Both the position numbers and the translations under genes were made by a program. The notes beneath the pieces were generated by a model, which saw only the letters and a program-made list of their open reading frames with translations, did no database searches and was not told the origin of the DNA. This document shows, in pieces, positions 6,601-62,990 of a stretch of 64,000 nucleotides of DNA. The stretch's first letter is position 1, and each line of letters starts with the position of its first letter. Source of the DNA: Bigelowiella natans CCMP2755 (Eukaryota; Protista; Cercozoa). Location of the stretch: the NCBI GenBank assembly GCA_000320545.1, contig ADNK01003163.1:1-64000 (forward strand). Reading direction: 5' to 3'.

Positions 6601-6653
<53 letters not shown>

Positions 6654-10375: not shown

Positions 10376-10421
10376 TAACTACTTTCTTACGATGTTTTCC
10401 CGATAGGAACTCGGACCACCT
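10376..10421 (+). repeat. 46-bp dispersed repeat, TpA-intact copy (sibling at 12898-12943)
   Basis: taactactttcttacgatgttttcccgataggaactcggaccacct matches 12898-12943 at 43/46 positions. Confidence 0.9.
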
Positions 10422-12029: not shown

Positions 12030-13060
12030 TATCTAACATAGCTGAGTTGTACGTGGGTGAGAGTGTACCGGTGGCATAGCACACACATGGCTAGCTAGCA
12101 CGATGCACTGGAATGCATAGCACATTGACGATATCGCACAGCACCGCCATGCATGTACGTGCTGCATGACCACAAAAGTGCGAAACTGTTGTCGACCATT
12201 CTTGATGACAGGGCACACAGCAAACGGCCACCATGTATGCTGGATCAGATCACACTGCACAATAGCATGGGCACTGTGACTGGTACGGCCAGCGCGCACA
12301 CGAAGCGCAAGCGAGTTGCTGCATGCAAAACAATGCGAAAGCCACAATGCGCGTTCCAAGCAACAAAGCATGCACCTGTGTGCACTTGATGAGTCGTGCG
12401 CACGTCCCCCACATCGCAATCGATTGAAAACCAAGTGGGCTGCGAGTGTTGTTGTGTGGCCCCGCCGCCAAGCGATGATTAAACGCGCACATGACGTCTC
12501 ACATGTGCACATTTTGCGAGCCTTCGAGTTTCGATTCAACTTTCCAATGCAAAGCAGGCTGCAACAACACTTTCCGATCCACTTCGCGTGGTGTGTCTCG
12601 TGGTGTATGCTCCCGTGCTAGCTAGCTAGCGTGCACCCACGCTAGCCACGGTGGACCTGACAAGGCAGCTGGCGCCAGCTGGCGCTGGGAAAATGCACTC
12701 ACTTGCTTCTGCTGCGTTGCTCATCATGCGGCGGGCACTTTTGTTCCTTTTCCACATTTTTGTCACTCACCAAGCAAGAACTTCCCTGGGACCTGAATCG
12801 ACGTTGGTGCCGTTCACACGGAGTGGCTCGGTGGTGAAAGGAGCGAAGCGGCGCGCACAAATGCAATGGGGCGAGAATGAGCCGAACAGCAACGATGTAA
12901 CTACTTGCTCACGATGTTTTCCCGATGGGAACTCGGACCACCTGTGAACGCTTGGCGAAGAAGCCACAAAGGAACCGCCATCTCTCTGCACACCTCAAGC
13001 GGGCTGGGCGGGTGCAAGGACGCAAGGACTGCATGCAAGGTGCACATCATTGAATAAATG
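12030..13060. mobile_element. Unclassified repeat island, TpA-depleted
   Basis: 12300-13050 retains only a few TpA, mostly in gctagctagc; contains the mutated copy of the 46-bp repeat (12898-12943). Confidence 0.6.
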
Positions 13061-17858: not shown

Positions 17859-18109
17859 CTCTCCACGGCAACCACTCCCTCGTTGTAGCGAGAGGGGAGA
17901 AAGGAAGTTGTCCTACATGCTCGTTTCGACGATGCGGTGAGCCTCAAGCCGCAGCCGTCGGGCAGATGTCGTCTACGTTGGGCTTGTTGTTGCAAATCTG
18001 GACAATTTTGTGTGCTTAGAACATCTCATTCGCGACTTCGTATGTTTGCACAGGATCATCATTGGCAATGTTATCAAAAGTTGTCATCGAATTTGGTTCG
18101 AAATATGTG

Positions 18110-19380
18110 CATGTTTCACCTTGAGACTGCGCAATGTCCGCTTGAGACAACTGCTCATTCGGCTTCATTCGTGCATTTTCTTCTTTCATTCTTTCATTCT
18201 TTCATTCATTCTTTCTTTCTTCGTTGTTTTCAGCTCGAGGCACTGCGTTTCGCACTTTGCAAGTGTCATGATGTTTCTTGTTTCTCATTTGGCTGCTAGT
18301 TGTGATGCATTCAATGTTTAGTTCGTGCCAATTTGCATGAACCCCGCTAGTTTGCTGGTCAGTCCTCACTGAAGCCAGTTCGAGGCACTGCATTTCGCGC
18401 ATTGCAAGTGTCTTGTCACACTTTGGAAATGCAGCATTTCATCATTGTTCTCATTGTTCTTGTTTCTTTCCCAGCCGCTCGAAGTGCGTCCAGCTTGTCA
18501 GCAGTGTTGTGCACGTCTTGTTGGAGTGTGGAAGTGAACACGACACGATCAATCAATCTTCTTTGTCTTCTCCTTCTTCTTCTTCCTCTTCTTCCCCTTC
18601 TTCTGGGACCAAACGAACCAATGTCATCTTGCTACCTTGCAATGAGTTGCGGCTGGGATGCAGCAAAGGACGACGACGCGCTAGCGCGACTCAAACACTG
18701 ACCGGCCAACTCAGTTGTGTCCAGCAAGTGCACCTGCCCTGTCTTGTTTCAGAAACAAAGTTGTCGTCGTCGATTGATGACCATCAATCAGGATCAGGAT
18801 CAAATTGGTGCATTGCAACAACCACAAAAAGAAAAAAATCTACATGGAAATCGAAGGACGAGTGAGGCAGTGGACACAAGACGTCATGCTTGCTTCAGAT
18901 GGCAAGAGGAAATCAAGGGAGAAGTGCTCAAGCAAGCCAGCAAGCGTGTGAAGGCACAGAAGCACAGATGCAACTTGTGGGTGCACGGTGCACTTGGACC
19001 GCGCTAGCGCGCGCACAGGAACGCCTCGCACAGCTTGGCAAAAACCTGAGCACTTGTGCTGGTGTGGCGACACGTGCACGAACCTGCACAACCCAGACAA
19101 TTTGCATGCACGTGTGAGAAAGTGGGACGCACGATGGCTAATGCATGCGGCCAGCGTCCTGCTTGGGCACATGCACCCAACTGGTCCAAACGTGCACAAA
19201 CACACATTGCAGCAATGCATCTGGGCAATGTCAGGGCACGCGTTACGCTTGTCCGACATGCGTGATCACGCGTCGTTCTAGCGCTGTTCGTTGTGCACGC
19301 CAAGAAGCATGCATGCAGCAGGACCAGAGTGAGCTAGGACGCAGCACAGCCGTTAGATTCCACAATGCAAACAATGATGC
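18110..19380. mobile_element. Unclassified repeat island, TpA-depleted, between the PSMG4 5' end and the NTH1 3' end
   Basis: About a dozen TpA in ~1.27 kb, nearly all CTA/TAG; two inverted copies of the cagtgcctcgaact motif (18231-18262, 18364-18407). Confidence 0.7.
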
Positions 19381-25499: not shown

Positions 25500-27625
25500 G
25501 TTTTTTGAACAATGAAGAAAGGCGGTCGCCGATCGATGCGACTTTGCACATGTGTGCTTCATCACACATTCAGCTACATGCGTGAGCTTGGCAGAATTGG
25601 CACAATCTGGGCGAGTGCACTTGCACCGTGTCGTCACAGCTGGCTAGCTGGTGGTGAGGTGATCTTTGAGTTTGCATTGTTATGCATGTGTGTTGCTCGT
25701 CGTTGCACTGCTAGACAGATCAGCTGCACCTTCATTTGACTCGCGCTCGCTCGGGCTCATCTGCTCATTGTTTCGAAACAGCGCGAACACGCATGGCAGA
25801 CCAGGTGCAATAAATGACATCAAGACCTGATCCAGTGGTGGTGAGCAGCGTTTTGTGATTTGCTTCACTCCTCACGAGTCACTCGGCCTCTGCACTGTCG
25901 TTTGATGCACCACATTGCATTGTCCTCTTGTCTCCGGGCCACGCCTGATTCCGTGCCAAACTGCGCCACGTGAACGAGGCTTTCTTGTCATGGTTTTCGA
26001 ACCCACGCGCCACGTCAATGTCACGTTCAATGTTCAATGTTTTGGTTCCATGCGTTTTGTGTGAAGGTGTCGCATTCTAGCATTGGCTGCACGTGGGGGA
26101 ACAGCGCGTCGCTGTTCTGATCATCCTGCCAGCCTGGCTGGGGCCTCACACCCTTGCAGCCAGGTCATCCGTCCAAGCTGGCAAGAGTGCGACAGGCCGG
26201 CGGGCGTGAAACTGCACACAAAACACACCCTCAACTTTTCCTGACCAGTTGATTGAGAAGGTCACGGATGAATCAGCGTGATGCGTGAAATCCTTTCCGT
26301 GGTTCAGCCGCTCCTGTGCAACTGCTTCGTTCGTTCATTCGCCTCGTTCGATCGCATTGCACAGCTCGTTTGTTTGGCTAGTTGGGGAGGATGAGTCAGC
26401 GTGTCCCATGCCAGCACGACCCTTTCAAGTGCTCCAACAAATCACTTCTTCTTTCTTTCTTTGCGATTGATCGTTTCTCCAAACATCAACTGTCAAAATC
26501 TGCAAATGCTTGCGGCTTGCATCGATCAAGCTAGCTAGCTAGCAAGCGATGCGAACTAGCCAGCTAGCGAAGTTCAAGGTCTGATGATGAAAAACCGCAT
26601 TTCAAAAAACGTTGCAAAAAGTTTGCAGTGCACGAAACGCAGTGCCTCGAACTAGCTCCAGTGACGGCGAAGAAGCAGAGGATTTGGATGATGGCACACC
26701 TCGGAAACCGGAAACCCTGGGCAGGAAACAATGTGGAATTTGAATTGATGTGGGATTTCAGGCAAAAACGCCTAGATCAACACATTGCATTGCAAAATGG
26801 CCGAGGATGATGCATGGTTACGACAAGGCATGTCAAAATTATCTTTTTTTGGGTCATCATGTGATGTTTCGTCCCAAATGTCCGACAACCTTTTTGGATG
26901 TGAAATGTTTGAATTTTGAACATTGTTGTTCAAAATCTGGAAGATCCAGACGACACTTTGGGAGTCTGCGTGTGGATTCTGACGAAGTGCACGTGCTCTG
27001 TTTGAACACCAACGGGTCCATTGACACCATGAGCGCGCCGTGTGAGCTTCGAGTGGTGTGATGTCACATTTGTGGTGCGTGGCAGTGTGTTTCGTGTGTT
27101 TTCGTCTGTGTTTCATGCGTGGTGTGTGTTTGTGACGTGGACGAATGGAGGAAGGGATCACATTGTGCGTGCCTCAGTGCAACGTTGAGTGTCAATTGCG
27201 GTGTGTGTGGTCATTGCAAGTGTCTTGTGTCACACAGATGTGTGTGGGAGGGTTGGCATGTGCCTGTGTGCATGAAGAAATCATCAATCTCTTCTCCTTT
27301 GGGGCATGAACCAACTTCATTGCTGAACACATTTCATGCATGTGATCCAATGTGCAATGTCATCATTTTTTGCAGCAGCAGTTTGGCAAAACGAATGCGA
27401 CAATGATGATGGTTTGTGATGCAGCCAAACAACTGTCACTGCGTGCAACCGCGCTGAGCTGGTGCACACGCATGTCTCATTGATGCAGACACGTGTGCAT
27501 GTCATGGCATGGCGTGTGCACGATGGATTCGCGCGCGCGCAACGTGATGCTGCAATCCATGGATGAACCACTGCACAGCATGATTGTGATGAAAAACGTG
27601 ACTTGGTGACTGCTGATTGCGATGA
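25500..27625. mobile_element. Unclassified transposon-derived DNA, TpA-depleted, contiguous with the pogo-like element
   Basis: Only ~16 TpA, 12 of them CTA-context; no microsatellite introns; includes the cagtgcctcgaactagc motif at 26623-26664. Confidence 0.6.
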
Positions 27626-30265
27626 TCAAATGACTGCTTTCGAACAAATGCGCTCATGCACTTTCATCTCATCAACAGATCTGATGCAACCCCCGCAGTG
27701 ATGCAAACTGCATCCACTGCAACTGTGCCATTTCCAATGATGTGAATTTTTCCTCTTCACTTTCTCAGGCATCAAATCCATCCATGCTCCTCTCAGCACG
27801 TGACACACGCCACAAGAATCGGACCAGTCAGGACACTTCTTCCAACTCTTCTTGCGTTTGTTGGATGATGCTGCCATGCATGTTTTGACGACGAAAGCAT
27901 CGAACTGTTTGTCTGCCTTGCAGTGTTTCCTGTGGGATTTCAGTGCGTCCTCAGAACAGCAGTCTGGGCACCACCACTTGGTGCACACGTCACAAGACAA
28001 TTGAGAATTCCACCCGTGATCATTCGGATTGGTTGCATCCTCAGGCAGCTCTGCGAATGCATGTTTTGGCACTTTGCACGTGTGACAAGACACACAATCC
28101 TGATCGATGACTGACATCCGTCTGCAGCTCCTGCAGTGTTTGCGTTGAGACGTTCTGATCTTGACTGACTGTTCATCGGCTGCCTTCTTTGCATCCTCCT
28201 TTTCCTTTTTGTTTTTTTCTTGCTCCTTCTTGCCATCTGGACGTGTTCTCCACTGCCTCCATCCGTCGTGTGTCAATGTGACTGATCTGTTGCTGCTCTC
28301 CTTCCGCTCGTGCACAACTTTCTTGTCAGGGTCGTGCAGCACGTCCACAGGCACGTGCTTGGCGTTGAACTCCGATTCTGTCGTGTGGCCCTTGGAGTTC
28401 ATTGACATTGCGAAGTGTGGAATCAATCTCATGGCCTTTGTTCGCCAATCTGGGAGCCGGATGAAGCCTTTGCAACGTTCAGACATCTCATCTGGATTGA
28501 ACGGATGCACGCCCGTCATCTCGAATGATTTTCTCACTTTGTCAGGGGTGCAACCCTTCACTGGCACCTCTGACATGCGTCCCAGAAAGCTGGGCAGAGA
28601 GGCCTTGAACGCAGCAGGAATGTCCTGATTTTCCCTCATTGCTCTCTTCACTCCGTTTGACACTCTCTTGCGTTTGGTTGACGCGACGTGCTCTTCGCTG
28701 TCGTTTTTGTCGTCGGTCTTTTGTTTGTGTTGACAATGAGCTGTGCTGTGAACCTGACCCACGTCCGCCGCGGCTGGTGGTCAGCGCTCGCCGAGGCAGG
28801 GGACTTTCCTGTCACGTGGTTGTGCAGTGCCAAGTGTCCAATGTCGTGTTTCACGTGCACCACTTGTTGGCTCTCCCCGTCTTGCATTTCGAAGAATGGG
28901 AGATCATCTTCCCCCGCCACCGCACGGCATCTGTTGTCAAATGGAATGATCATCTCCTCCATCAATTTTTTGTGAACCTCAGCACGTGAGGTCTCTTTCC
29001 CGGTCGTCCACAAATGACCTGGGCCACTCACGTCCTTGGTTCCTAGCTCTGGCACCTCGACGAACAACGGAGATGTGGGCTTCCCAAAAGACTTCCAAAG
29101 TGCAACGGGCCCTGAAGATCCTGACGCGGTGAGTGGTGCAGTGCACTTGGTGCTTTGATCTGGTCTTTTGCCAGGACCTTCCCTTGATGAACCCCTGGAG
29201 TCTTTCGCCCCTCTCTTGGAAACATGCGGATCTGCAGACTTTGACATCTTGGCATGATCCTCATCAAATTTCTCACAGGTCCAATCTGCATTTCCCACAC
29301 ATTCTCGGGGAAGAACGTGACGCATCTTCCCCGTTTTGATGCACGCATCGGTGTCCAATGCGGTGCACACTGTGAGAGATGCGAAACTCAAAAAATTGCG
29401 AATGCCATCTCCTGCTGTGCATCTTGCTCTGGTGCTTTCTTGTCCGCGTTTGGTTGAGTTTTCGATGGACGTGATGGCCTCCAACGTGTGCTTCTTTGTC
29501 TCAGCAGTCAATGAATTGCATTTCACGTTCTCTTTGCCGAACACTCTTGATCCAAAATTCGACTGCCTGGCCTGCTCAGACTTCAGCAAAGATTCGATCT
29601 CACTCAACCTCACAGTGAGGTCGTTCTTGTGTGCCAGTTCCACTTGATCGAGAATCTTGGCACACGCGATTGGGATGAAGGGCATGAGGACGACCTGATG
29701 AGGGCAGCACTTCGTTCAGGCAGAAATCTTCGTCAGTGTCAACCCTTTTCAGTTTTCTTGACCAACGATGCAGACTGGACCTACTAATTCTCCCGCTCAA
29801 CCTTCTGACGAGTGCAGGGATCATTGCACCGAGTGTGCCCTTTGCAATCGCGTCCATTGACCGCTCCGCTGCGTGCCTCCTTTCCTCCGTGCTGAGAGCG
29901 CCAACGGACGACGAGGTGCTGCTACTGTTGGCCGATGAACATGACGCGTTGTCATCATCAAGCACCACAGGAGGTGGGACAGTGTGCAGCTCGGGAAACA
30001 CGGTGGAGGTGGACACGGTTGACACGGAATCGGACACAGAAGAGGACGAGGATGCGCGACGGCTAGCTCTGGAGTTCGACGCGTTGAGCACATGCTGCTC
30101 GTTTCTAGCCTTCTTCCAATGCTCTTCCGATGATGAAGTCTTTTTCTGCAGTTCAAACAAATTCTGCATGGCTCGCATGACATCAGCCTGGGCGTCCTCG
30201 ACAGAGGCGGTCGCCACGTCATTGGTGGTGGAAGCTTTCCTCTTCTTTTTGCCCGATTTCCCCAT
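27626..30265 (-). mobile_element. pogo/Fot1-like (IS630-Tc1-mariner) DDD transposase, two frameshifts, TpA-erased
   Basis: Three sequential ORFs. ORF1: HTH-like ISRSSLHRW...GRP. ORF2: NADWT (D1), MQDG (D2), KSPASASADHQP. ORF3, across a frameshift: ADVG (QPxD, D3, ~37 aa after D2), SFEMTGVHPFNP (pogo GxYPFNP motif with Y->H), then two Cys/His PHD-like fingers. No Tyr in any of the three ORFs. TIRs not identified. Confidence 0.85.
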
Positions 30266-30938
30266 CAGAGAGACCGCTCAACCCAATGTGGTGTCACATG
30301 TGTGTGTGTTTGATGCTTTGGTTGCGATGGATGTGTGCAGAGTGTTTGTGTAGGGCCACACCAGCGCGTGCGAAGGGAGAGAAAGGAGACAGAAAGGACG
30401 AAGGCTCAGGCGTGTATCGGAAATAAGACAACGCCGAACTAAAAAAAAAAGGAAGGTACTGACGTCGTTTTTTTTTAACACAATATGACCTAAAATGACC
30501 AAAAAAGTGACGAATTGGCGGGAAACACAAACGAAATGGCTTCCCGCATTTTCTGTTAGCGCATTTTTGGGTGAAAATGCCTAGAAAGAGTGCCAGTCTC
30601 ACATTAATTCAAATCCCACATTATTTCCATCGCAGGAAACCCGCATTTCAAAATGACAATTTGCTACGGCAATCACGACATGGCCTGTGTTTCACATCTA
30701 CGTCCATGAACTCAAGGGAAAAACAGAGAGAAATCCATGTGTCATCTCGCACATTTAAACATAGGGGAGTTTTAAGGATTTCTTCGATGTTTCTCCAACC
30801 GACACGCGGGTTGGGCGTCGTCATGGTCTGTGCGTGTCAACCAACCAGATTGCTTCATTTTTTGTACTGGGATTTACACACTATTTTCACAGACAGTCTT
30901 GAATTATTTCATGAATGGCATGTATTTTGTGTCTTTAG

Positions 30939-31766
<828 letters not shown>

Positions 31767-31849
31767 GAAGGATCAATTGATCCACACGAAACAATGAAGT
31801 GAAGCAGAATGCATGCAACGTCACAAATTTACATCAGTGTTAGCATCGC

Positions 31850-33118
31850 ATCAGATTTGCAACTGAAACCATCAACAAAAAGTGTGACCTGAACACATGA
31901 GTTCTCAATGCGATTGCGTCACACTTGCAACGCATCACAGACGTGCAATGCGATGTGTGCAACATGCATCATGTTGCTGTCACTGTGTCCATCATGCGTG
32001 TGCGCGAATCGCATGCGATCGAGCACGCGAATCGCATGCGATCGAGCACGAAATCGCTGGGGCATGTTTGCAAGGCATGCCGTTGTGGTGTCTAGCTAGC
32101 TAGCTTGGCTAGGTGTGAGTGGGGAGCTGAGCAAGGACAGCATCCGGCCTCTCACTCAAGCCAGACGCACACGTTCCAATGATCACCTCCACCATTGTGC
32201 ATTGAAAACATTCACACACACCACATCCGTGTTGCATCATCACCGCCATCACGCAACGCACACTGCTGATGATCGACGTCACAATTGCCAGGCTAGCAGG
32301 TTGAGCTTCGTTTTGTCACTGTCACTTGACCAAGTCAGCAAGCAATCCAGGAATGCGTGCAGGACCCACGGGGTCCCATGTGTGTGTGCATGTGTGTGTG
32401 TTGTCTGTGACGTGTGCATCGACCACTTCACATGCATCTCCAAGCTCAGGTGCAATGCAAGTGAATCAGCGCACACACGAACACGTCTAGCTAGCTAGAC
32501 GTGGCACACGTGTTGATCGTGACTTGTTTGGCACACACGACTCCGTCAATGTGCCCTGTGACGACTGGGTTTTGCACAAACCATGCTTGCGCGCGCGGCC
32601 TGGCACGCTCAATCGTTGCAATTGGACATTGGAAGCACACTGGAGCCTGTTTGAAGTTCAAGTTTGATTTTTTTTCGAATTTCAGCTTCAAAACTTCACT
32701 TTTCAACGCCTGCCAGCGGAAAATGCCACTTCTGAAACAGCTAGCGCAGTTGCACTTGCTGTGCCACAAATTTTGCAAGCTCATGAAGGTGTGCGCACAC
32801 TGGCTTCACGTGCTTGCAAAATTTCAGCACAAAAACGCAAAAAATGCTCCAATTGAGAGGTCATGCCACTCGTCACAGGTTTGACGGAGTTGATTCGTCA
32901 ATGCAGGGGTCCTGAGAATGTGAGAACCAAAGCGAACATTCCAGGAAAGCTCAAAGCTCAGACTCGTGCTCCGAAATGGGATGACGAATCAGGAACAAGA
33001 ACAAGAACAAGAACAATGATGATGAACTACATTTCCAAAATGTTGCAAGACATTTGCAGTGTGCGAAATGCAGTGCCTCGAACTAGCTTTGGTGAGGACT
33101 ACAACTAGCAAACTAATG
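31850..33118. mobile_element. Unclassified repeat island, TpA-depleted
   Basis: 14 TpA by hand count, all in CTA context (11 CTAG); includes a 23-bp tandem repeat at 32003-32048 and the cagtgcctcgaactagc motif at 33054-33097. Confidence 0.75.
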
Positions 33119-38560: not shown

Positions 38561-38610
<50 letters not shown>

Positions 38611-39087: not shown

Positions 39088-39163
<76 letters not shown>

Positions 39164-41584: not shown

Positions 41585-41643
<59 letters not shown>

Positions 41644-45117: not shown

Positions 45118-45171
<54 letters not shown>

Positions 45172-61535: not shown

Positions 61536-62199
61536 CACACATGCGTGTGGAGCACGCCTCTCATGCACATGGTACATGCCTGATATCGCCTAACCTGATG
61601 ACGTCACTTGCGAGCAAATTTCCTTAGTTTGCAATTGCATCCATGCTGTGTGTATGCGAAGCAGCGCAAGCCATAGATTTCTATAGTGGACACAGCAATT
61701 CCATGTATGTATTACGTGGTGTCTATCATTTCTTAGCTGTGCAATGATGCAGGGGCGTAGTTGCGTCATGGACTGTTAATATATTTGACTCGCGATTTTT
61801 GATGGAGCGCCACTAGCGTCGCACGGTCGTGGCGGCACTGTCGCACATGCACACGTCAGATTGCACTTCCAGCTGCAGATGCAGCTAGTGTATCGCTAGA
61901 TCGTGAAACGAGTTTGCTTGCAGATCTGCATCTTTAGATCTCTAATCTTTTCTGCGCTGACGACTGCTGAAGCTCGACTACAAACTACGTGTCGCATGTA
62001 TGCGTACACCGCACCCACATTCTAACCATCATCCCAACTTTGTCATGAGGTGCACATACAAGCAGGCCTGTAAGCTTGTAATTGTACATGTTTCACCGTG
62101 TCGACAGTCTGCCCGCCTGTGTGTCATCTATCAACTAGCAGTACGTTTTAGCGGGCTTGCGGTAGCTGCTTAGCTTTTGTGCGCGGGACTGTGCTGATG

Positions 62200-62561
62200 T
62201 CACTGAGTGTCAACACGCGGTCCTGTGTGCGTTTGAATTGTGTTGATGACTTGTGACTTGCGCTGCATGCATGTGCGCATTGGGTTCCGGCGCATTCGCG
62301 AAGATTCTCGAATCTTCCAGAATTCTCTCGAATTCTCTGGAAGATTCTCGAAGCTTCCGGAATGCTCTCGAAGATTCTGGAAGATTCTCGAATCTTCCGG
62401 AATGTTCTCGAAGCTTCTGGAAGATTCTCGAAGCTTCTCGAAGATTCCCGAAGTTCTGAGAACTTCCATGCGCATGTGCGCAGCGCAGCGTGCAGCACGA
62501 GTGGACGTGCGCATGCTGCGACAGCTCCTTGATCGTGGGTGGCGCGGCCAGACCGCTGACA
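62200..62561 (-). mobile_element. Putative Copia LTR (TpA-erased) preceded by a polypurine tract
   Basis: On the minus strand, catgggggcg|TGTCAGCGG (PPT-LTR junction at 62561); candidate TGACA end near 62198-62212; no TpA in 62173-62854. Confidence 0.5.
62295..62467. promoter_or_regulatory. Long heat-shock-element-like array (GAAnnTTCnn)n
   Basis: 11 consecutive in-phase 10-bp units at 62340-62449 (one TTC->CTC mismatch) plus flanking units; a second ttcYRgaa cluster at ~62927-62980. Confidence 0.7.
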
Positions 62562-62990
62562 CGCCCCCATGGACGTGGTGACCACGATCAGAGTGCTGAT
62601 GTGCACGTGCCATTTCTGCCATGGTGACAGAACTTTTGCACGGTGCTGCACATGGACGCCATTCCCAAAGGTTTCGGAGTCCGAATGGTTGGCAAAATTT
62701 TGCCGACCAAACATCGCACCACCAGACGCCTGAAACTCTGTGCAGAGGCACAAAATTCCCAGGCTTGCAACTGGGCAAGGTGCCATGGGCATGGTGCACT
62801 CCGAAATCGGCAGGAAAAATTCTTGCCTGACTGGGCAAGGTGCCACCATTTCGGTACGAACTGGGACTTGTCCAAAAAATTAATTTTTTAAACGACACCA
62901 GTGTGCTTCCAGAAAAAATTCTGGAATCCCTCACGTGCTTCCAGAAAACATTCTGGAACATTCTGGAACATTCTGGAACACCGATCTGGT
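62562..62990 (-). mobile_element. TpA-depleted internal 3' region of the older LTR element
   Basis: Lies immediately 5' of the PPT on the minus strand; TpA-void to 62854; ctgggcaaggtgcca repeated at 62771 and 62831. Confidence 0.45.

What the first reader, a model, noticed from the sequence alone, without database searches (positions are those of the whole stretch)
27626..30265. A transposase of ~880 residues with zero tyrosines; a conserved Tyr is read as His
Seen: the ORFs at 29600-30265, 28648-29685 and 27626-28762 contain no Y and are His/Cys-rich. The pogo-family motif TGxYPFNP reads TGVHPFNP, and the LINE remnant at ~2360 reads PAGC where PxGY is usual. Tyr codons (TAY) become CAY (His) or TGY (Cys) under TA->CA/TG. 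This polarises the process as loss of ancestral TA and shows how the element is inactivated: by recoding rather than by nonsense mutation. The DDD triad (NADWT, MQDG, QP-AD) is still recognisable.
Basis: partly seen in the sequence, partly recalled or inferred. Interest (0 to 1): 0.8.

Follow-up and report, generated by a model that had tools for sequence, protein, structure and literature searches.

The report
Tyrosine-free dead transposon gene, TpA-erased
A decayed mobile-element gene of the alga Bigelowiella natans has lost every tyrosine codon because the alga's already reported TpA-to-CpA/TpG hypermutation ran to completion over it, turning Tyr into His or Cys without making a stop codon.

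Summary
Window 26841-29043 has no TA dinucleotide at all, and 25712-30351 has only 20. The three minus-strand reading frames (856 codons) hold no Tyr, ATA, TTA or GTA codon. The locus is Bigelowiella natans gene model 145390.

TpA->TpG/CpA hypermutation of foreign DNA in this alga was shown in mutation-accumulation lines in a 2026 bioRxiv preprint. Its supplement lists this gene and its paralog 80972 among TpA-depleted genes, so the process is already known. The scan also noted it before on other pieces of this genome.

New here is a direct test of polarity. Against the paralog, 7 of 86 amino-acid differences are His<->Cys (CAY against TGY), where about 0.1 is expected. Twenty differences fit opposite outcomes at one ancestral in-codon TA. 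So Tyr codons existed when the copies split, and each copy was erased separately.

TA->CA/TG cannot create a stop and removes TAG and half of TAA, so the frames stay open. The copy also carries two small frameshifts that the gene model hides as introns.

The pogo identity is unconfirmed: no Pfam, PDB or database homolog was found, only motif resemblance. The TA sites that survive are mostly CTAG.

The parts
25712..30351 (.). TpA-erased domain (20 TA in 4.64 kb; CA and TG about 1.6x expected)
26841..29043 (.). core with no TA dinucleotide at all (2203 bp); its only stop codons in six frames are TGA
29741..30265 (-). coding segment A (residues 1-175 of model 145390 = P0001): low-complexity N-terminus and an HTH-like stretch
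28651..29715 (-). coding segment B, a 355-codon open frame shifted by one base relative to A and C; holds NADWT and MQDG
27626..28780 (-). coding segment C, a 384-codon open frame ending at TGA 27626-27628; holds TGVHPFNP, a Lys/Glu-rich linker and a Cys/His-rich tail
29650..29665 (-). frameshift 1: one extra base (TGCCAAG against TGC-AAG inferred from the paralog). The gene model bridges it with a 49-nt GT..AG 'intron'
28759..28776 (-). frameshift 2: two extra bases in CAGCCGCGGCGG. It splits the HQP|ADVGQV motif, which the paralog reads without a break
29873..29875 (-). His codon CAC where the paralog has Cys; inferred ancestral TAC (Tyr)
29768..29770 (-). His codon CAT where the paralog has Cys, inside SSL[H/C]RW of the HTH-like stretch; inferred ancestral TAT (Tyr)
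29143..29145 (-). Cys codon TGC where the paralog has His; inferred ancestral TAC
28733..28735 (-). Cys codon TGT where the paralog has His; inferred ancestral TAT
28727..28729 (-). His codon CAC where the paralog has Cys; inferred ancestral TAC
28385..28387 (-). His codon CAC where the paralog has Cys; inferred ancestral TAC
28133..28135 (-). Cys codon TGC where the paralog has His; inferred ancestral TAC
28493..28516 (-). TGVHPFNP motif (His = CAT). Its resemblance to the C-terminal motif of pogo/Fot1 transposases is recalled from memory and was not tested
29278..29292 (-). NADWT, putative first catalytic Asp motif (the paralog has NAGWT)
28876..28887 (-). MQDG, putative second catalytic Asp motif, 37 residues before the Asp of QPAD in the paralog-guided reading
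26716..26757 (.). left arm of a 42-nt inverted repeat, inside the erased domain; it has CA and TG where the right arm has TA
30595..30636 (.). right arm of the inverted repeat, outside the erased domain, with its TA intact (ATTAAT, ATTATT). A candidate terminal repeat, but no TA target duplication was seen

Best explanation
The stretch 25.7-30.35 kb is a dead copy of a gene present at least twice in the Bigelowiella natans nuclear genome. It is JGI model 145390 on scaffold 98; the paralog is model 80972 on scaffold 76. It is probably the transposase of a DNA transposon.

The alga's TpA-specific T:A->C:G hypermutation has run to completion over this copy. On either strand the A of 5'-TA-3' becomes G, so TA becomes TG or CA. 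The likely chemistry is deamination of adenine to inosine in DNA, but the enzyme is not identified.

Consequences for the reading frame:
- Every Tyr codon is TAY, so every Tyr became His (CAY) or Cys (TGY).
- ATA became Met or Thr. TTA, CTA and GTA became Leu/Ser, Leu/Pro and Val/Ala.
- The change can never create a stop. It destroys TAG always and TAA half the time. The frames therefore stay open and gene predictors still call a gene.
- The protein is dead from roughly a hundred missense changes, ordinary decay and two small frameshift insertions.

Status of each step:
- Shown here: the TA erasure, the Tyr-free frames, the codon logic, independent erasure of the two copies after they split, and slow erasure of CTAG.
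- Shown by others: TpA->TpG/CpA arises de novo in this species.
- Inferred: adenine deamination, targeting as a genome defence, and the transposase identity.
For: - Erasure: no TA in 2204 bp and CA/TG excess.
- Tyr-free frames: 0 Tyr in 856 codons and no ATA/TTA/GTA.
- Organism and gene model: P0001 = jgi/Bigna1/145390. The paralog P0002 = 80972 has 80% identity and is also Tyr-free.
- Published process: the preprint 10.64898/2026.01.13.699255 shows 230 of 231 de novo mutations in two viral inserts as A->G/T->C at TpA. It finds 324 low-TpA CDS enriched in transposon domains. Both gene ids are in its supplementary lists.
- Polarity: 7 of 86 differences with the paralog are His<->Cys, with window codons CAY/TGY. 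A simulated null gives mean 0.1 and maximum 2 in 2000 runs.
- Double changes: 9 of the 18 differences that need two or more nucleotide changes are exactly CA<->TG.
- TA-type differences: 20 of the 22 differences in the classes H/C, M/T, A/V, L/S and L/P have the window codon in the exact TA-derived form.
- Stops: the enumeration shows no sense-to-stop change is possible. Stops in the domain are TGA 239, TAG 27, TAA 3, with mean spacing 34 codons against 18 in the control.
- Real coding frames: three open frames of 225, 355 and 384 codons lie in series on one strand, against a mean of 33.
- Strand symmetry: CA 1.60 and TG 1.57 observed/expected; discordant sites split 4 His to 3 Cys in this copy.
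Against: - No DNA of the paralog could be fetched, so the two copies were compared only protein against DNA. Single A/G differences show no clear enrichment for CA/TG context above the base rate.
- No outside homolog or Pfam domain supports 'transposase'.
- The candidate inverted repeat does not coincide with the erased domain and has no TA target duplication.
- The two frameshifts lie in C/G runs and could be assembly errors.
- The chemistry and the targeting signal are not addressed by any result here.
Confidence: 0.85

Rival explanations
1. The element was TA-free from the start. Either its foreign source avoids TA, or selection acted against TA (for example against a TA-cutting nuclease), and no mutation process acted in this genome.
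For: TA is under-represented in many genomes. The window as a whole has TA observed/expected of 0.77.
Against: - Zero TA in 2.2 kb, in coding and non-coding frames alike, with sharp edges.
- His<->Cys and other CA<->TG discordances between the paralogs need a TA ancestor.
- Repeat pairs within the window show TA in one copy and CA/TG in the other.
- De novo TpA mutations were seen in the laboratory.
Confidence: 0.02
2. The changes are RNA editing of transcripts (ADAR-like A-to-I), fixed in the genome by reverse transcription of edited RNA.
For: ADAR enzymes prefer a 5' U next to the edited A. This is established knowledge and is cited in the preprint.
Against: - Both strands are hit equally: CA and TG are equally enriched, and His and Cys outcomes are balanced. 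An RNA route would give only TA->TG on the sense strand.
- The erased domain runs about 1.9 kb beyond the stop codon.
- The surviving sites are CTAG/TAG, whereas UAG is the preferred ADAR triplet (established knowledge, not tested here).
- The preprint sees the changes in single-copy integrated DNA.
Confidence: 0.03
3. The open, Tyr-free frame is a working, domesticated host gene rather than a dead element. Its openness would then reflect selection.
For: There is no in-frame stop in 856 codons, an annotated gene model exists, and there are only two copies.
Against: - Openness is the expected by-product of a mutagen that cannot make stops. Non-coding frames are also about twice as open as elsewhere.
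- This copy needs two frame changes, which the paralog reads straight through.
- The paralog lacks the TGVHPFNP stretch and has Gly and Asn at the two putative catalytic Asp positions.
- There is no detectable homolog anywhere.
Confidence: 0.05
4. The gene is a mobile or viral-derived gene, but not a pogo/Fot1 (DDE_1) transposase. The motif matches would then be chance or belong to another family.
For: - There is no DDE_1, HTH_Tnp_Tc5 or any other transposase hit at E<=10.
- The AlphaFold model is uninformative, with pLDDT 37.7.
- The DDE family enriched among TpA-depleted genes in the preprint is PF13359 (Harbinger type). No pogo-type Pfam accession occurs in the stored supplement.
- No TA target duplication was seen.
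Against: - Four motifs occur in the order and rough spacing recalled for DDE_1 transposases: N-x-D, D-G-x-S, Q-P-x-D-V-G and F-x-x-T-G-x-x-P-F-N-P. The spacing between the last two Asp is 37, within DD29-59D.
- The protein is 844-859 aa and the element about 4 kb, both within the published pogo range.
- An HTH-like S-x-S-S-L-[Tyr]-R-W stretch appears once the discordant His/Cys is read as Tyr.
Confidence: 0.4

Closest known systems
TpA hypermutation of integrated foreign DNA in Bigelowiella natans (Mettrop et al., bioRxiv 2026, doi 10.64898/2026.01.13.699255)
   Same: Same organism and same signature: TpA->TpG/CpA on both strands, TpA depletion with CpA+TpG gain, and transposon-type genes among the targets. 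This gene and its paralog are in that paper's lists of TpA-depleted CDS.
   Different: The paper shows ongoing mutation only in a giant-virus insert and a virophage insert. It does not discuss tyrosine loss, stop codons, sequence context beyond TpA, or paralog comparison.

This locus is an end state with TA completely gone. It adds independent erasure of two copies and slow erasure of CTAG.
Repeat-induced point mutation (RIP) of fungi
   Same: Dinucleotide-specific transitions confined to repeated or foreign DNA with sharp borders. They hit both strands and each copy separately, and they kill transposon genes.
   Different: - The direction is opposite. RIP is C->T, mostly CpA->TpA. It creates TA and many stop codons (CAA/CAG->TAA/TAG, TGG->TAG/TGA).
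- Here TA is destroyed and no stop can arise.
- GC rises instead of falling: 0.49-0.53 in the domain against about 0.41 nearby.
- Dependence on duplication is not shown. The preprint's giant-virus target is single copy. A 3 x 231-bp tandem polyubiquitin repeat about 700 bp from the domain edge keeps its TA.
Polynucleotide adenine deaminases (ADAR, ADAT2/3, TadA) and APOBEC-type antiviral hypermutation
   Same: A->G outcome. The required 5' T matches the 5' U preference of ADAR and the U33-A34 substrate of ADAT/TadA (established knowledge; preprint discussion). The defence logic resembles that of APOBEC.
   Different: - The substrate is chromosomal double-stranded DNA, hit on both strands.
- TAG/CTAG is the most refractory context, whereas ADAR favours UAG (established knowledge).
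- No enzyme is tied to the process. The preprint's ADAT2-like candidate Bn78255 is untested.
pogo / Fot1 (DDE_1) DNA transposons
   Same: Protein length, element length, the DD37D-like spacing of the by-eye motifs and a roughly 40-nt inverted repeat all fall within the published ranges.
   Different: There is no DDE_1 or DNA-binding-domain hit by hmmscan and no TA/TAA target duplication. The right repeat arm lies outside the erased domain. Membership is not established.

Membership tests
B. natans TpA-hypermutated sequence (Mettrop et al. 2026) | Strong TpA depletion together with CpA+TpG enrichment | tested here: met
   TA observed/expected is 0.17, 0.00, 0.00 and 0.07 in the four 1-kb windows from 26001 to 30000. 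CA/TG is 1.4-2.06. On my 1-kb grid only two windows exceed the paper's 1.52 cut-off for CpA+TpG, so membership of their '124 clusters' is not certain.
B. natans TpA-hypermutated sequence (Mettrop et al. 2026) | The changes are T/A->C/G transitions at TpA, on either strand | tested here: met
   7 His<->Cys and 20 in-codon TA-type discordances with paralog 80972. Repeat pairs within the window show TA against CA/TG.
B. natans TpA-hypermutated sequence (Mettrop et al. 2026) | Gene listed among the low-TpA CDS of the paper | tested here: met
   Ids 145390 and 80972 each occur twice in supplementary file 2.
B. natans TpA-hypermutated sequence (Mettrop et al. 2026) | Elevated de novo mutation rate at the locus in mutation-accumulation lines | not testable with these tools
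   This needs the read data. Only 20 TA targets are left at this locus in any case.
pogo superfamily (definition in PMC7386202) | DDE_1 catalytic domain found by hmmscan | tested here: not met
   No DDE_1 hit at E<=10 for the three ORFs, P0001 or P0002.
pogo superfamily (definition in PMC7386202) | CENP-B_N / HTH_Tnp_Tc5-type DNA-binding domain | tested here: not met
   There are only weak matches to unrelated HTH-like families at residues 158-177, with E 0.08-3.7.
pogo superfamily (definition in PMC7386202) | Catalytic triad with DD29-59D spacing | tested here: inconclusive
   By-eye motifs give MQD..(37)..QPAD in the paralog-guided reading. No alignment to real members was possible.
pogo superfamily (definition in PMC7386202) | Terminal inverted repeats flanked by a TA/TAA/TAAA target duplication | tested here: inconclusive
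   A 42-nt inverted repeat lies at 26716-26757 / 30595-30636, 83% complementary over 40 nt. Its flanks read AAAC, not TA. A left-side TA could itself have been erased.
pogo superfamily (definition in PMC7386202) | Several copies in the genome | tested here: met
   At least two copies exist, on scaffolds 98 and 76. The full copy number is unknown.
Fungal RIP | C:G->T:A transitions (CpA->TpA) that raise TA and AT content | tested here: not met
   The direction is opposite: TA is lost, and GC is 0.49-0.53 in the domain.
ADAR-type editing | 5' U and 3' G neighbour preference on double-stranded RNA | tested here: not met
   The 5' T requirement fits. But CTAG/TAG sites are the survivors: 32 of 56 against 64 of 2291 in the control, odds ratio 46. 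Both strands are affected equally.

The most novel reading that the evidence does not exclude
The TpA hypermutation of B. natans is a general genome defence that acts copy by copy after insertion, on transposons as well as viral inserts, and runs to completion. Its chemistry makes it a mutagen that cannot produce stop codons and that heals TAG/TAA nonsense. Its slow action on CTAG points to a sequence-reading DNA adenine deaminase unlike ADAR.

One corollary is that Tyr->Cys/His recoding makes long open Cys/His-rich 'ghost genes'. These inflate gene counts, and they may explain part of the zinc-finger enrichment reported among TpA-depleted genes.
Probability: 0.45. Interest if true: 0.55.

Novelty: already known. 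Interest (0 to 1): 0.35.

Why it matters
The underlying process is remarkable: a RIP-like defence that runs in the opposite chemical direction. It was published as a preprint in 2026, and this very gene is in its lists, so this finding adds detail rather than discovery.

Three details are useful:
- His<->Cys differences between paralogs are a simple marker of erased Tyr codons that needs no outgroup. They show that each copy was mutated separately after duplication, which extends the process from two viral inserts to transposon-like repeats.
- The mutagen cannot make stops and removes TAG/TAA. Dead elements therefore stay open, and predictors call them as genes, with frameshifts hidden as introns. 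This matters for the B. natans gene catalogue and for any Pfam enrichment done on it.
- CTAG is strongly refractory. This constrains the specificity of the unknown enzyme and argues against ADAR-like preferences.

Tried and rejected
- Pfam on the three ORFs, on P0001/P0002 and on ten ORFs of other TA-poor islands, including the supposed LINE at 1994-2695: no transposase, RT or endonuclease hit.
- The search for homologous proteins with ORF2 and ORF1: nothing, because the length window excluded the 844-aa model.
- phmmer of ORF2 against 1.84 billion representatives: only the locus's own model.
- Profile of the two paralogs against PDB sequences: nothing.
- AlphaFold of ORF2: pLDDT 37.7, not usable, so no fold search was run.
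- The look-up of encoding contigs for P0002, P0001 and ORF1: not on record, so no DNA of the paralog.
- Scans of metagenome and viral contigs for relatives: none.
- Context test on single A/G differences between the copies: no enrichment above the already high CA/TG base rate, so uninformative.
- A TA-restored protein was not searched against Pfam.
- Rejected readings: native TA avoidance, RNA editing plus retro-copying, and domestication (see rivals).
Full report
**What is in the sequence**

The window has a mean TA observed/expected ratio of 0.77, but TA is distributed in two states. Most 1-kb windows lie at 0.7-1.2. A few islands lie near zero.

The largest island contains the finding. There is no TA at all between 26840 and 29044 (2204 bp), and only 20 TA lie between 25712 and 30351. 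The control part of the window has 7.9% TA dinucleotides, so about 170 would be expected in the TA-free core. CA and TG are raised in compensation, to 1.60 and 1.57 times expectation in the domain and about 2.0 in 27001-28000. GC is 0.49-0.53 there, against about 0.41 in the right half of the window.

**The reading frames**

Three long open frames lie in series on the minus strand: 29603-30277 (225 codons), 28651-29715 (355) and 27629-28780 (384). The first and third share a frame; the middle one is shifted. None contains Tyr.

Stitched with the paralog as guide, the frames give 856 codons with:
- 0 TAT, TAC, ATA, TTA and GTA, and 1 CTA
- His 4.9%, Cys 3.9%, Ile 2.5%

The absence of Tyr and the excess of His and Cys also hold in the other five frames. 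They follow from the dinucleotide composition and are not a property of the protein. Mean stop-to-stop distance in the core is 33 codons, so three frames of 225-384 codons on one strand indicate a real former coding region.

**Organism and gene**

- A phmmer search of the middle frame against 1.84 billion representatives returned one protein, P0001.
- A search with P0001 named it jgi/Bigna1/145390 (aug1.98_g20098). This is the Bigelowiella natans gene model of this very locus.
- The same search gave one paralog, P0002 = jgi/Bigna1/80972 on scaffold 76, with 859 aa, 80% identity and also no Tyr.

**Is it already known?**

Yes. A bioRxiv preprint (Mettrop et al., doi 10.64898/2026.01.13.699255, version of April 2026) reports the following:
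- In B. natans mutation-accumulation lines, 231 of 302 nuclear mutations fall in two integrated viral regions.
- 230 of those 231 are A->G or T->C, and all of these lie at TpA.
- The genome holds 324 CDS with almost no TpA, enriched in DDE endonuclease, reverse-transcriptase and zinc-finger domains, and 124 TpA-poor clusters.
- The authors propose DNA adenine deamination and name an ADAT2-like candidate.

Both 145390 and 80972 appear in the paper's supplementary gene lists. The main text never mentions tyrosine, histidine, stop codons, nonsense or any context beyond TpA. No other paper in the library describes the process. First-stage notes of this scan record the same 'reverse RIP' on many other pieces of this genome, and one records a Tyr-free open ORF elsewhere.

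No outside homolog could be found, so I used the paralog.

- tblastn of P0002 on the window gives 750 aligned columns and 86 differences.
- Seven differences are His<->Cys. The window codon is CAC/CAT four times and TGC/TGT three times.
- His<->Cys needs two adjacent nucleotide changes, CA<->TG. A simulation with the same number of amino-acid differences gives a mean of 0.1 and never more than 2 in 2000 runs.
- Of the 18 differences that need two or more nucleotide changes, 9 are exactly CA<->TG.
- The same test on the other TA codons (ATA -> ATG/ACA, TTA -> TTG/TCA, CTA -> CTG/CCA, GTA -> GTG/GCA) brings the count to 20 differences that fit opposite outcomes at one ancestral in-codon TA.
- Those 20 make up 20 of the 22 differences in the classes H/C, M/T, A/V, L/S and L/P.

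So the common ancestor of the two copies still had TAY (Tyr) at seven or more sites and TA at twenty or more in-codon sites. Each copy lost them separately afterwards.

There are also 29 concordant His and 18 concordant Cys columns. That leaves room for roughly 20-25 former Tyr in 750 columns, a normal Tyr content; this figure is an estimate, not a measurement. One discordant site lies in S-S-L-[H/C]-R-W at 29762-29779, which with Tyr reads like the recognition helix of many transposase HTH domains. I recall that resemblance from memory and did not test it.

Two small repeat pairs within the window show the same polarity:
- The 42-nt inverted repeat at 26716-26757 / 30595-30636 has ATTAAT and ATTATT in the arm outside the domain. 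The arm inside has ATCAAT and ATTGTT.
- The 46-nt repeat at 10376 / 12898 differs at three positions, two of them TA->CA and TA->TG.

**Recoding without nonsense**

Enumerating all in-codon and cross-codon TA->CA/TG changes shows that none turns a sense codon into a stop. TAG always becomes Gln or Trp. TAA becomes Gln or stays a stop as TGA.

In the domain the six frames hold 239 TGA, 27 TAG and 3 TAA. The core holds only TGA. Stops are half as dense as in the control, one per 34 codons against one per 18. This is the mirror image of fungal RIP, which makes TAA and TAG.

P0002 reads straight through both frame changes, and the residues there are conserved. That implies one extra base at 29650-29665 (TGCCAAG) and two extra bases at 28759-28776 (CAGCCGCGGCGG) in the window copy. 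The Augustus model hides both as introns; the first is a 49-nt GT..AG. Both sites are C/G runs, so assembly error cannot be excluded.

The paralog is damaged in other ways. It lacks the TGVHPFNP stretch, and it has Gly and Asn at the two putative catalytic Asp positions. About three quarters of the differences between the copies are not of the in-codon TA type, so ordinary decay has also acted.

**Is it a pogo transposase?**

This is not established.

- Pfam gives no DDE_1, HTH_Tnp_Tc5 or other transposase hit even at E<=10.
- A PDB sequence profile search is empty, and the structure model is unusable.
- Scans of metagenomic and viral contigs found no relative.
- The spacing between the last two Asp is 37, within the DD29-59D range given for pogo. 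Protein and element sizes also fit.
- The inverted repeat has no TA duplication and does not match the borders of the erased domain.

I put pogo/Fot1 ancestry at roughly even odds. The specific claim that the His of TGVHPFNP stands for a conserved Tyr could not be tested. The 'LINE remnant' at 1994-2695 has no Pfam support either; its PAGC (Cys = TGC) is merely compatible with a former TAC.

**Extra facts about the process from this window**

- Surviving TA sites are overwhelmingly CTAG. They make up 13 of 20 in this domain and 32 of 56 over six islands, against 64 of 2291 in the control (odds ratio 46, p = 3e-32).
- The core has lost even these, so CTAG is slow rather than immune.
- ADAR-type enzymes favour UAG (established knowledge), so this speaks against an ADAR-like specificity.
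- The two strands are hit equally.
- Borders are sharp. A polyubiquitin gene at 31029-31766 consists of three 231-bp tandem repeats 93-95% identical. It keeps a normal TA content (25 TA in about 780 bp) between this domain and a second erased island at 31842-33028. Repetition alone is therefore not the trigger.

**Verdict**

The polarity and the Tyr->His/Cys recoding are confirmed by a new internal test. The family assignment is unproven.

The phenomenon, and this gene's membership in it, are already in the literature. Interest is therefore moderate to low as a discovery. The paralog His/Cys marker, the stop-proof logic and its effect on gene models, and the slow erasure of CTAG are useful additions.

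Noticed in passing
window 31029-31766 (+), flanked by 25712-30351 and 31842-33028: A polyubiquitin gene (three 231-bp tandem repeats, 93-95% identical) keeps a normal TA content (25 TA in about 780 bp). It lies between two TpA-erased islands, with borders sharp to a few hundred bases. Tandem repetition alone does not attract the process.
   Followed up: partly
window 25712-30351, 2050-2960, 12284-13060, 18104-19140, 31842-33028: The TA sites that survive in erased islands are mostly CTAG: 32 of 56 against 2.8% of TA sites in the control. They include a GCTAGCTAGCTAGC run at 26530-26543. CTAG is a slow target. The preprint does not mention this, but another first-stage note does.
   Followed up: yes
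window 10376-10421 and 12898-12943: A 46-nt direct repeat has one copy in normal DNA and one at the edge of an erased island. Two of the three differences are TA->CA and TA->TG.
   Followed up: yes
window 26716-26757 and 30595-30636: A 42-nt inverted repeat brackets the gene. The arm inside the erased domain has CA/TG where the outside arm has TA. If these are the element's ends, the erased domain is shifted about 1 kb past the left end and stops about 250 bp short of the right end.
   Followed up: partly
window 6604-6653, 38562-38605, 41588-41643, 39092-39157, 45118-45165: All five compound dinucleotide microsatellites have one polarity: (TA)n(TG)n or its reverse complement (CA)n(TA)n. There are none of (TG)n(TA)n or (TA)n(CA)n. 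Long (TA)n tracts persist in normal DNA. A link to the TpA->TpG process is possible but untested.
   Followed up: no
window 62284-62473: A TA-free island (62171-62855) holds a tandem array with a 10-bp period (units such as ATTCTCGAAG). ORFs are open in several frames and none has a Pfam match.
   Followed up: no
window 27629-28200 (-), C-terminal third of the protein: A Cys/His-rich tail looks like zinc-finger repeats but has no Pfam match. Part of its Cys/His content may be former Tyr. Such recoding could contribute to the zinc-finger enrichment reported for TpA-depleted genes.
   Followed up: no
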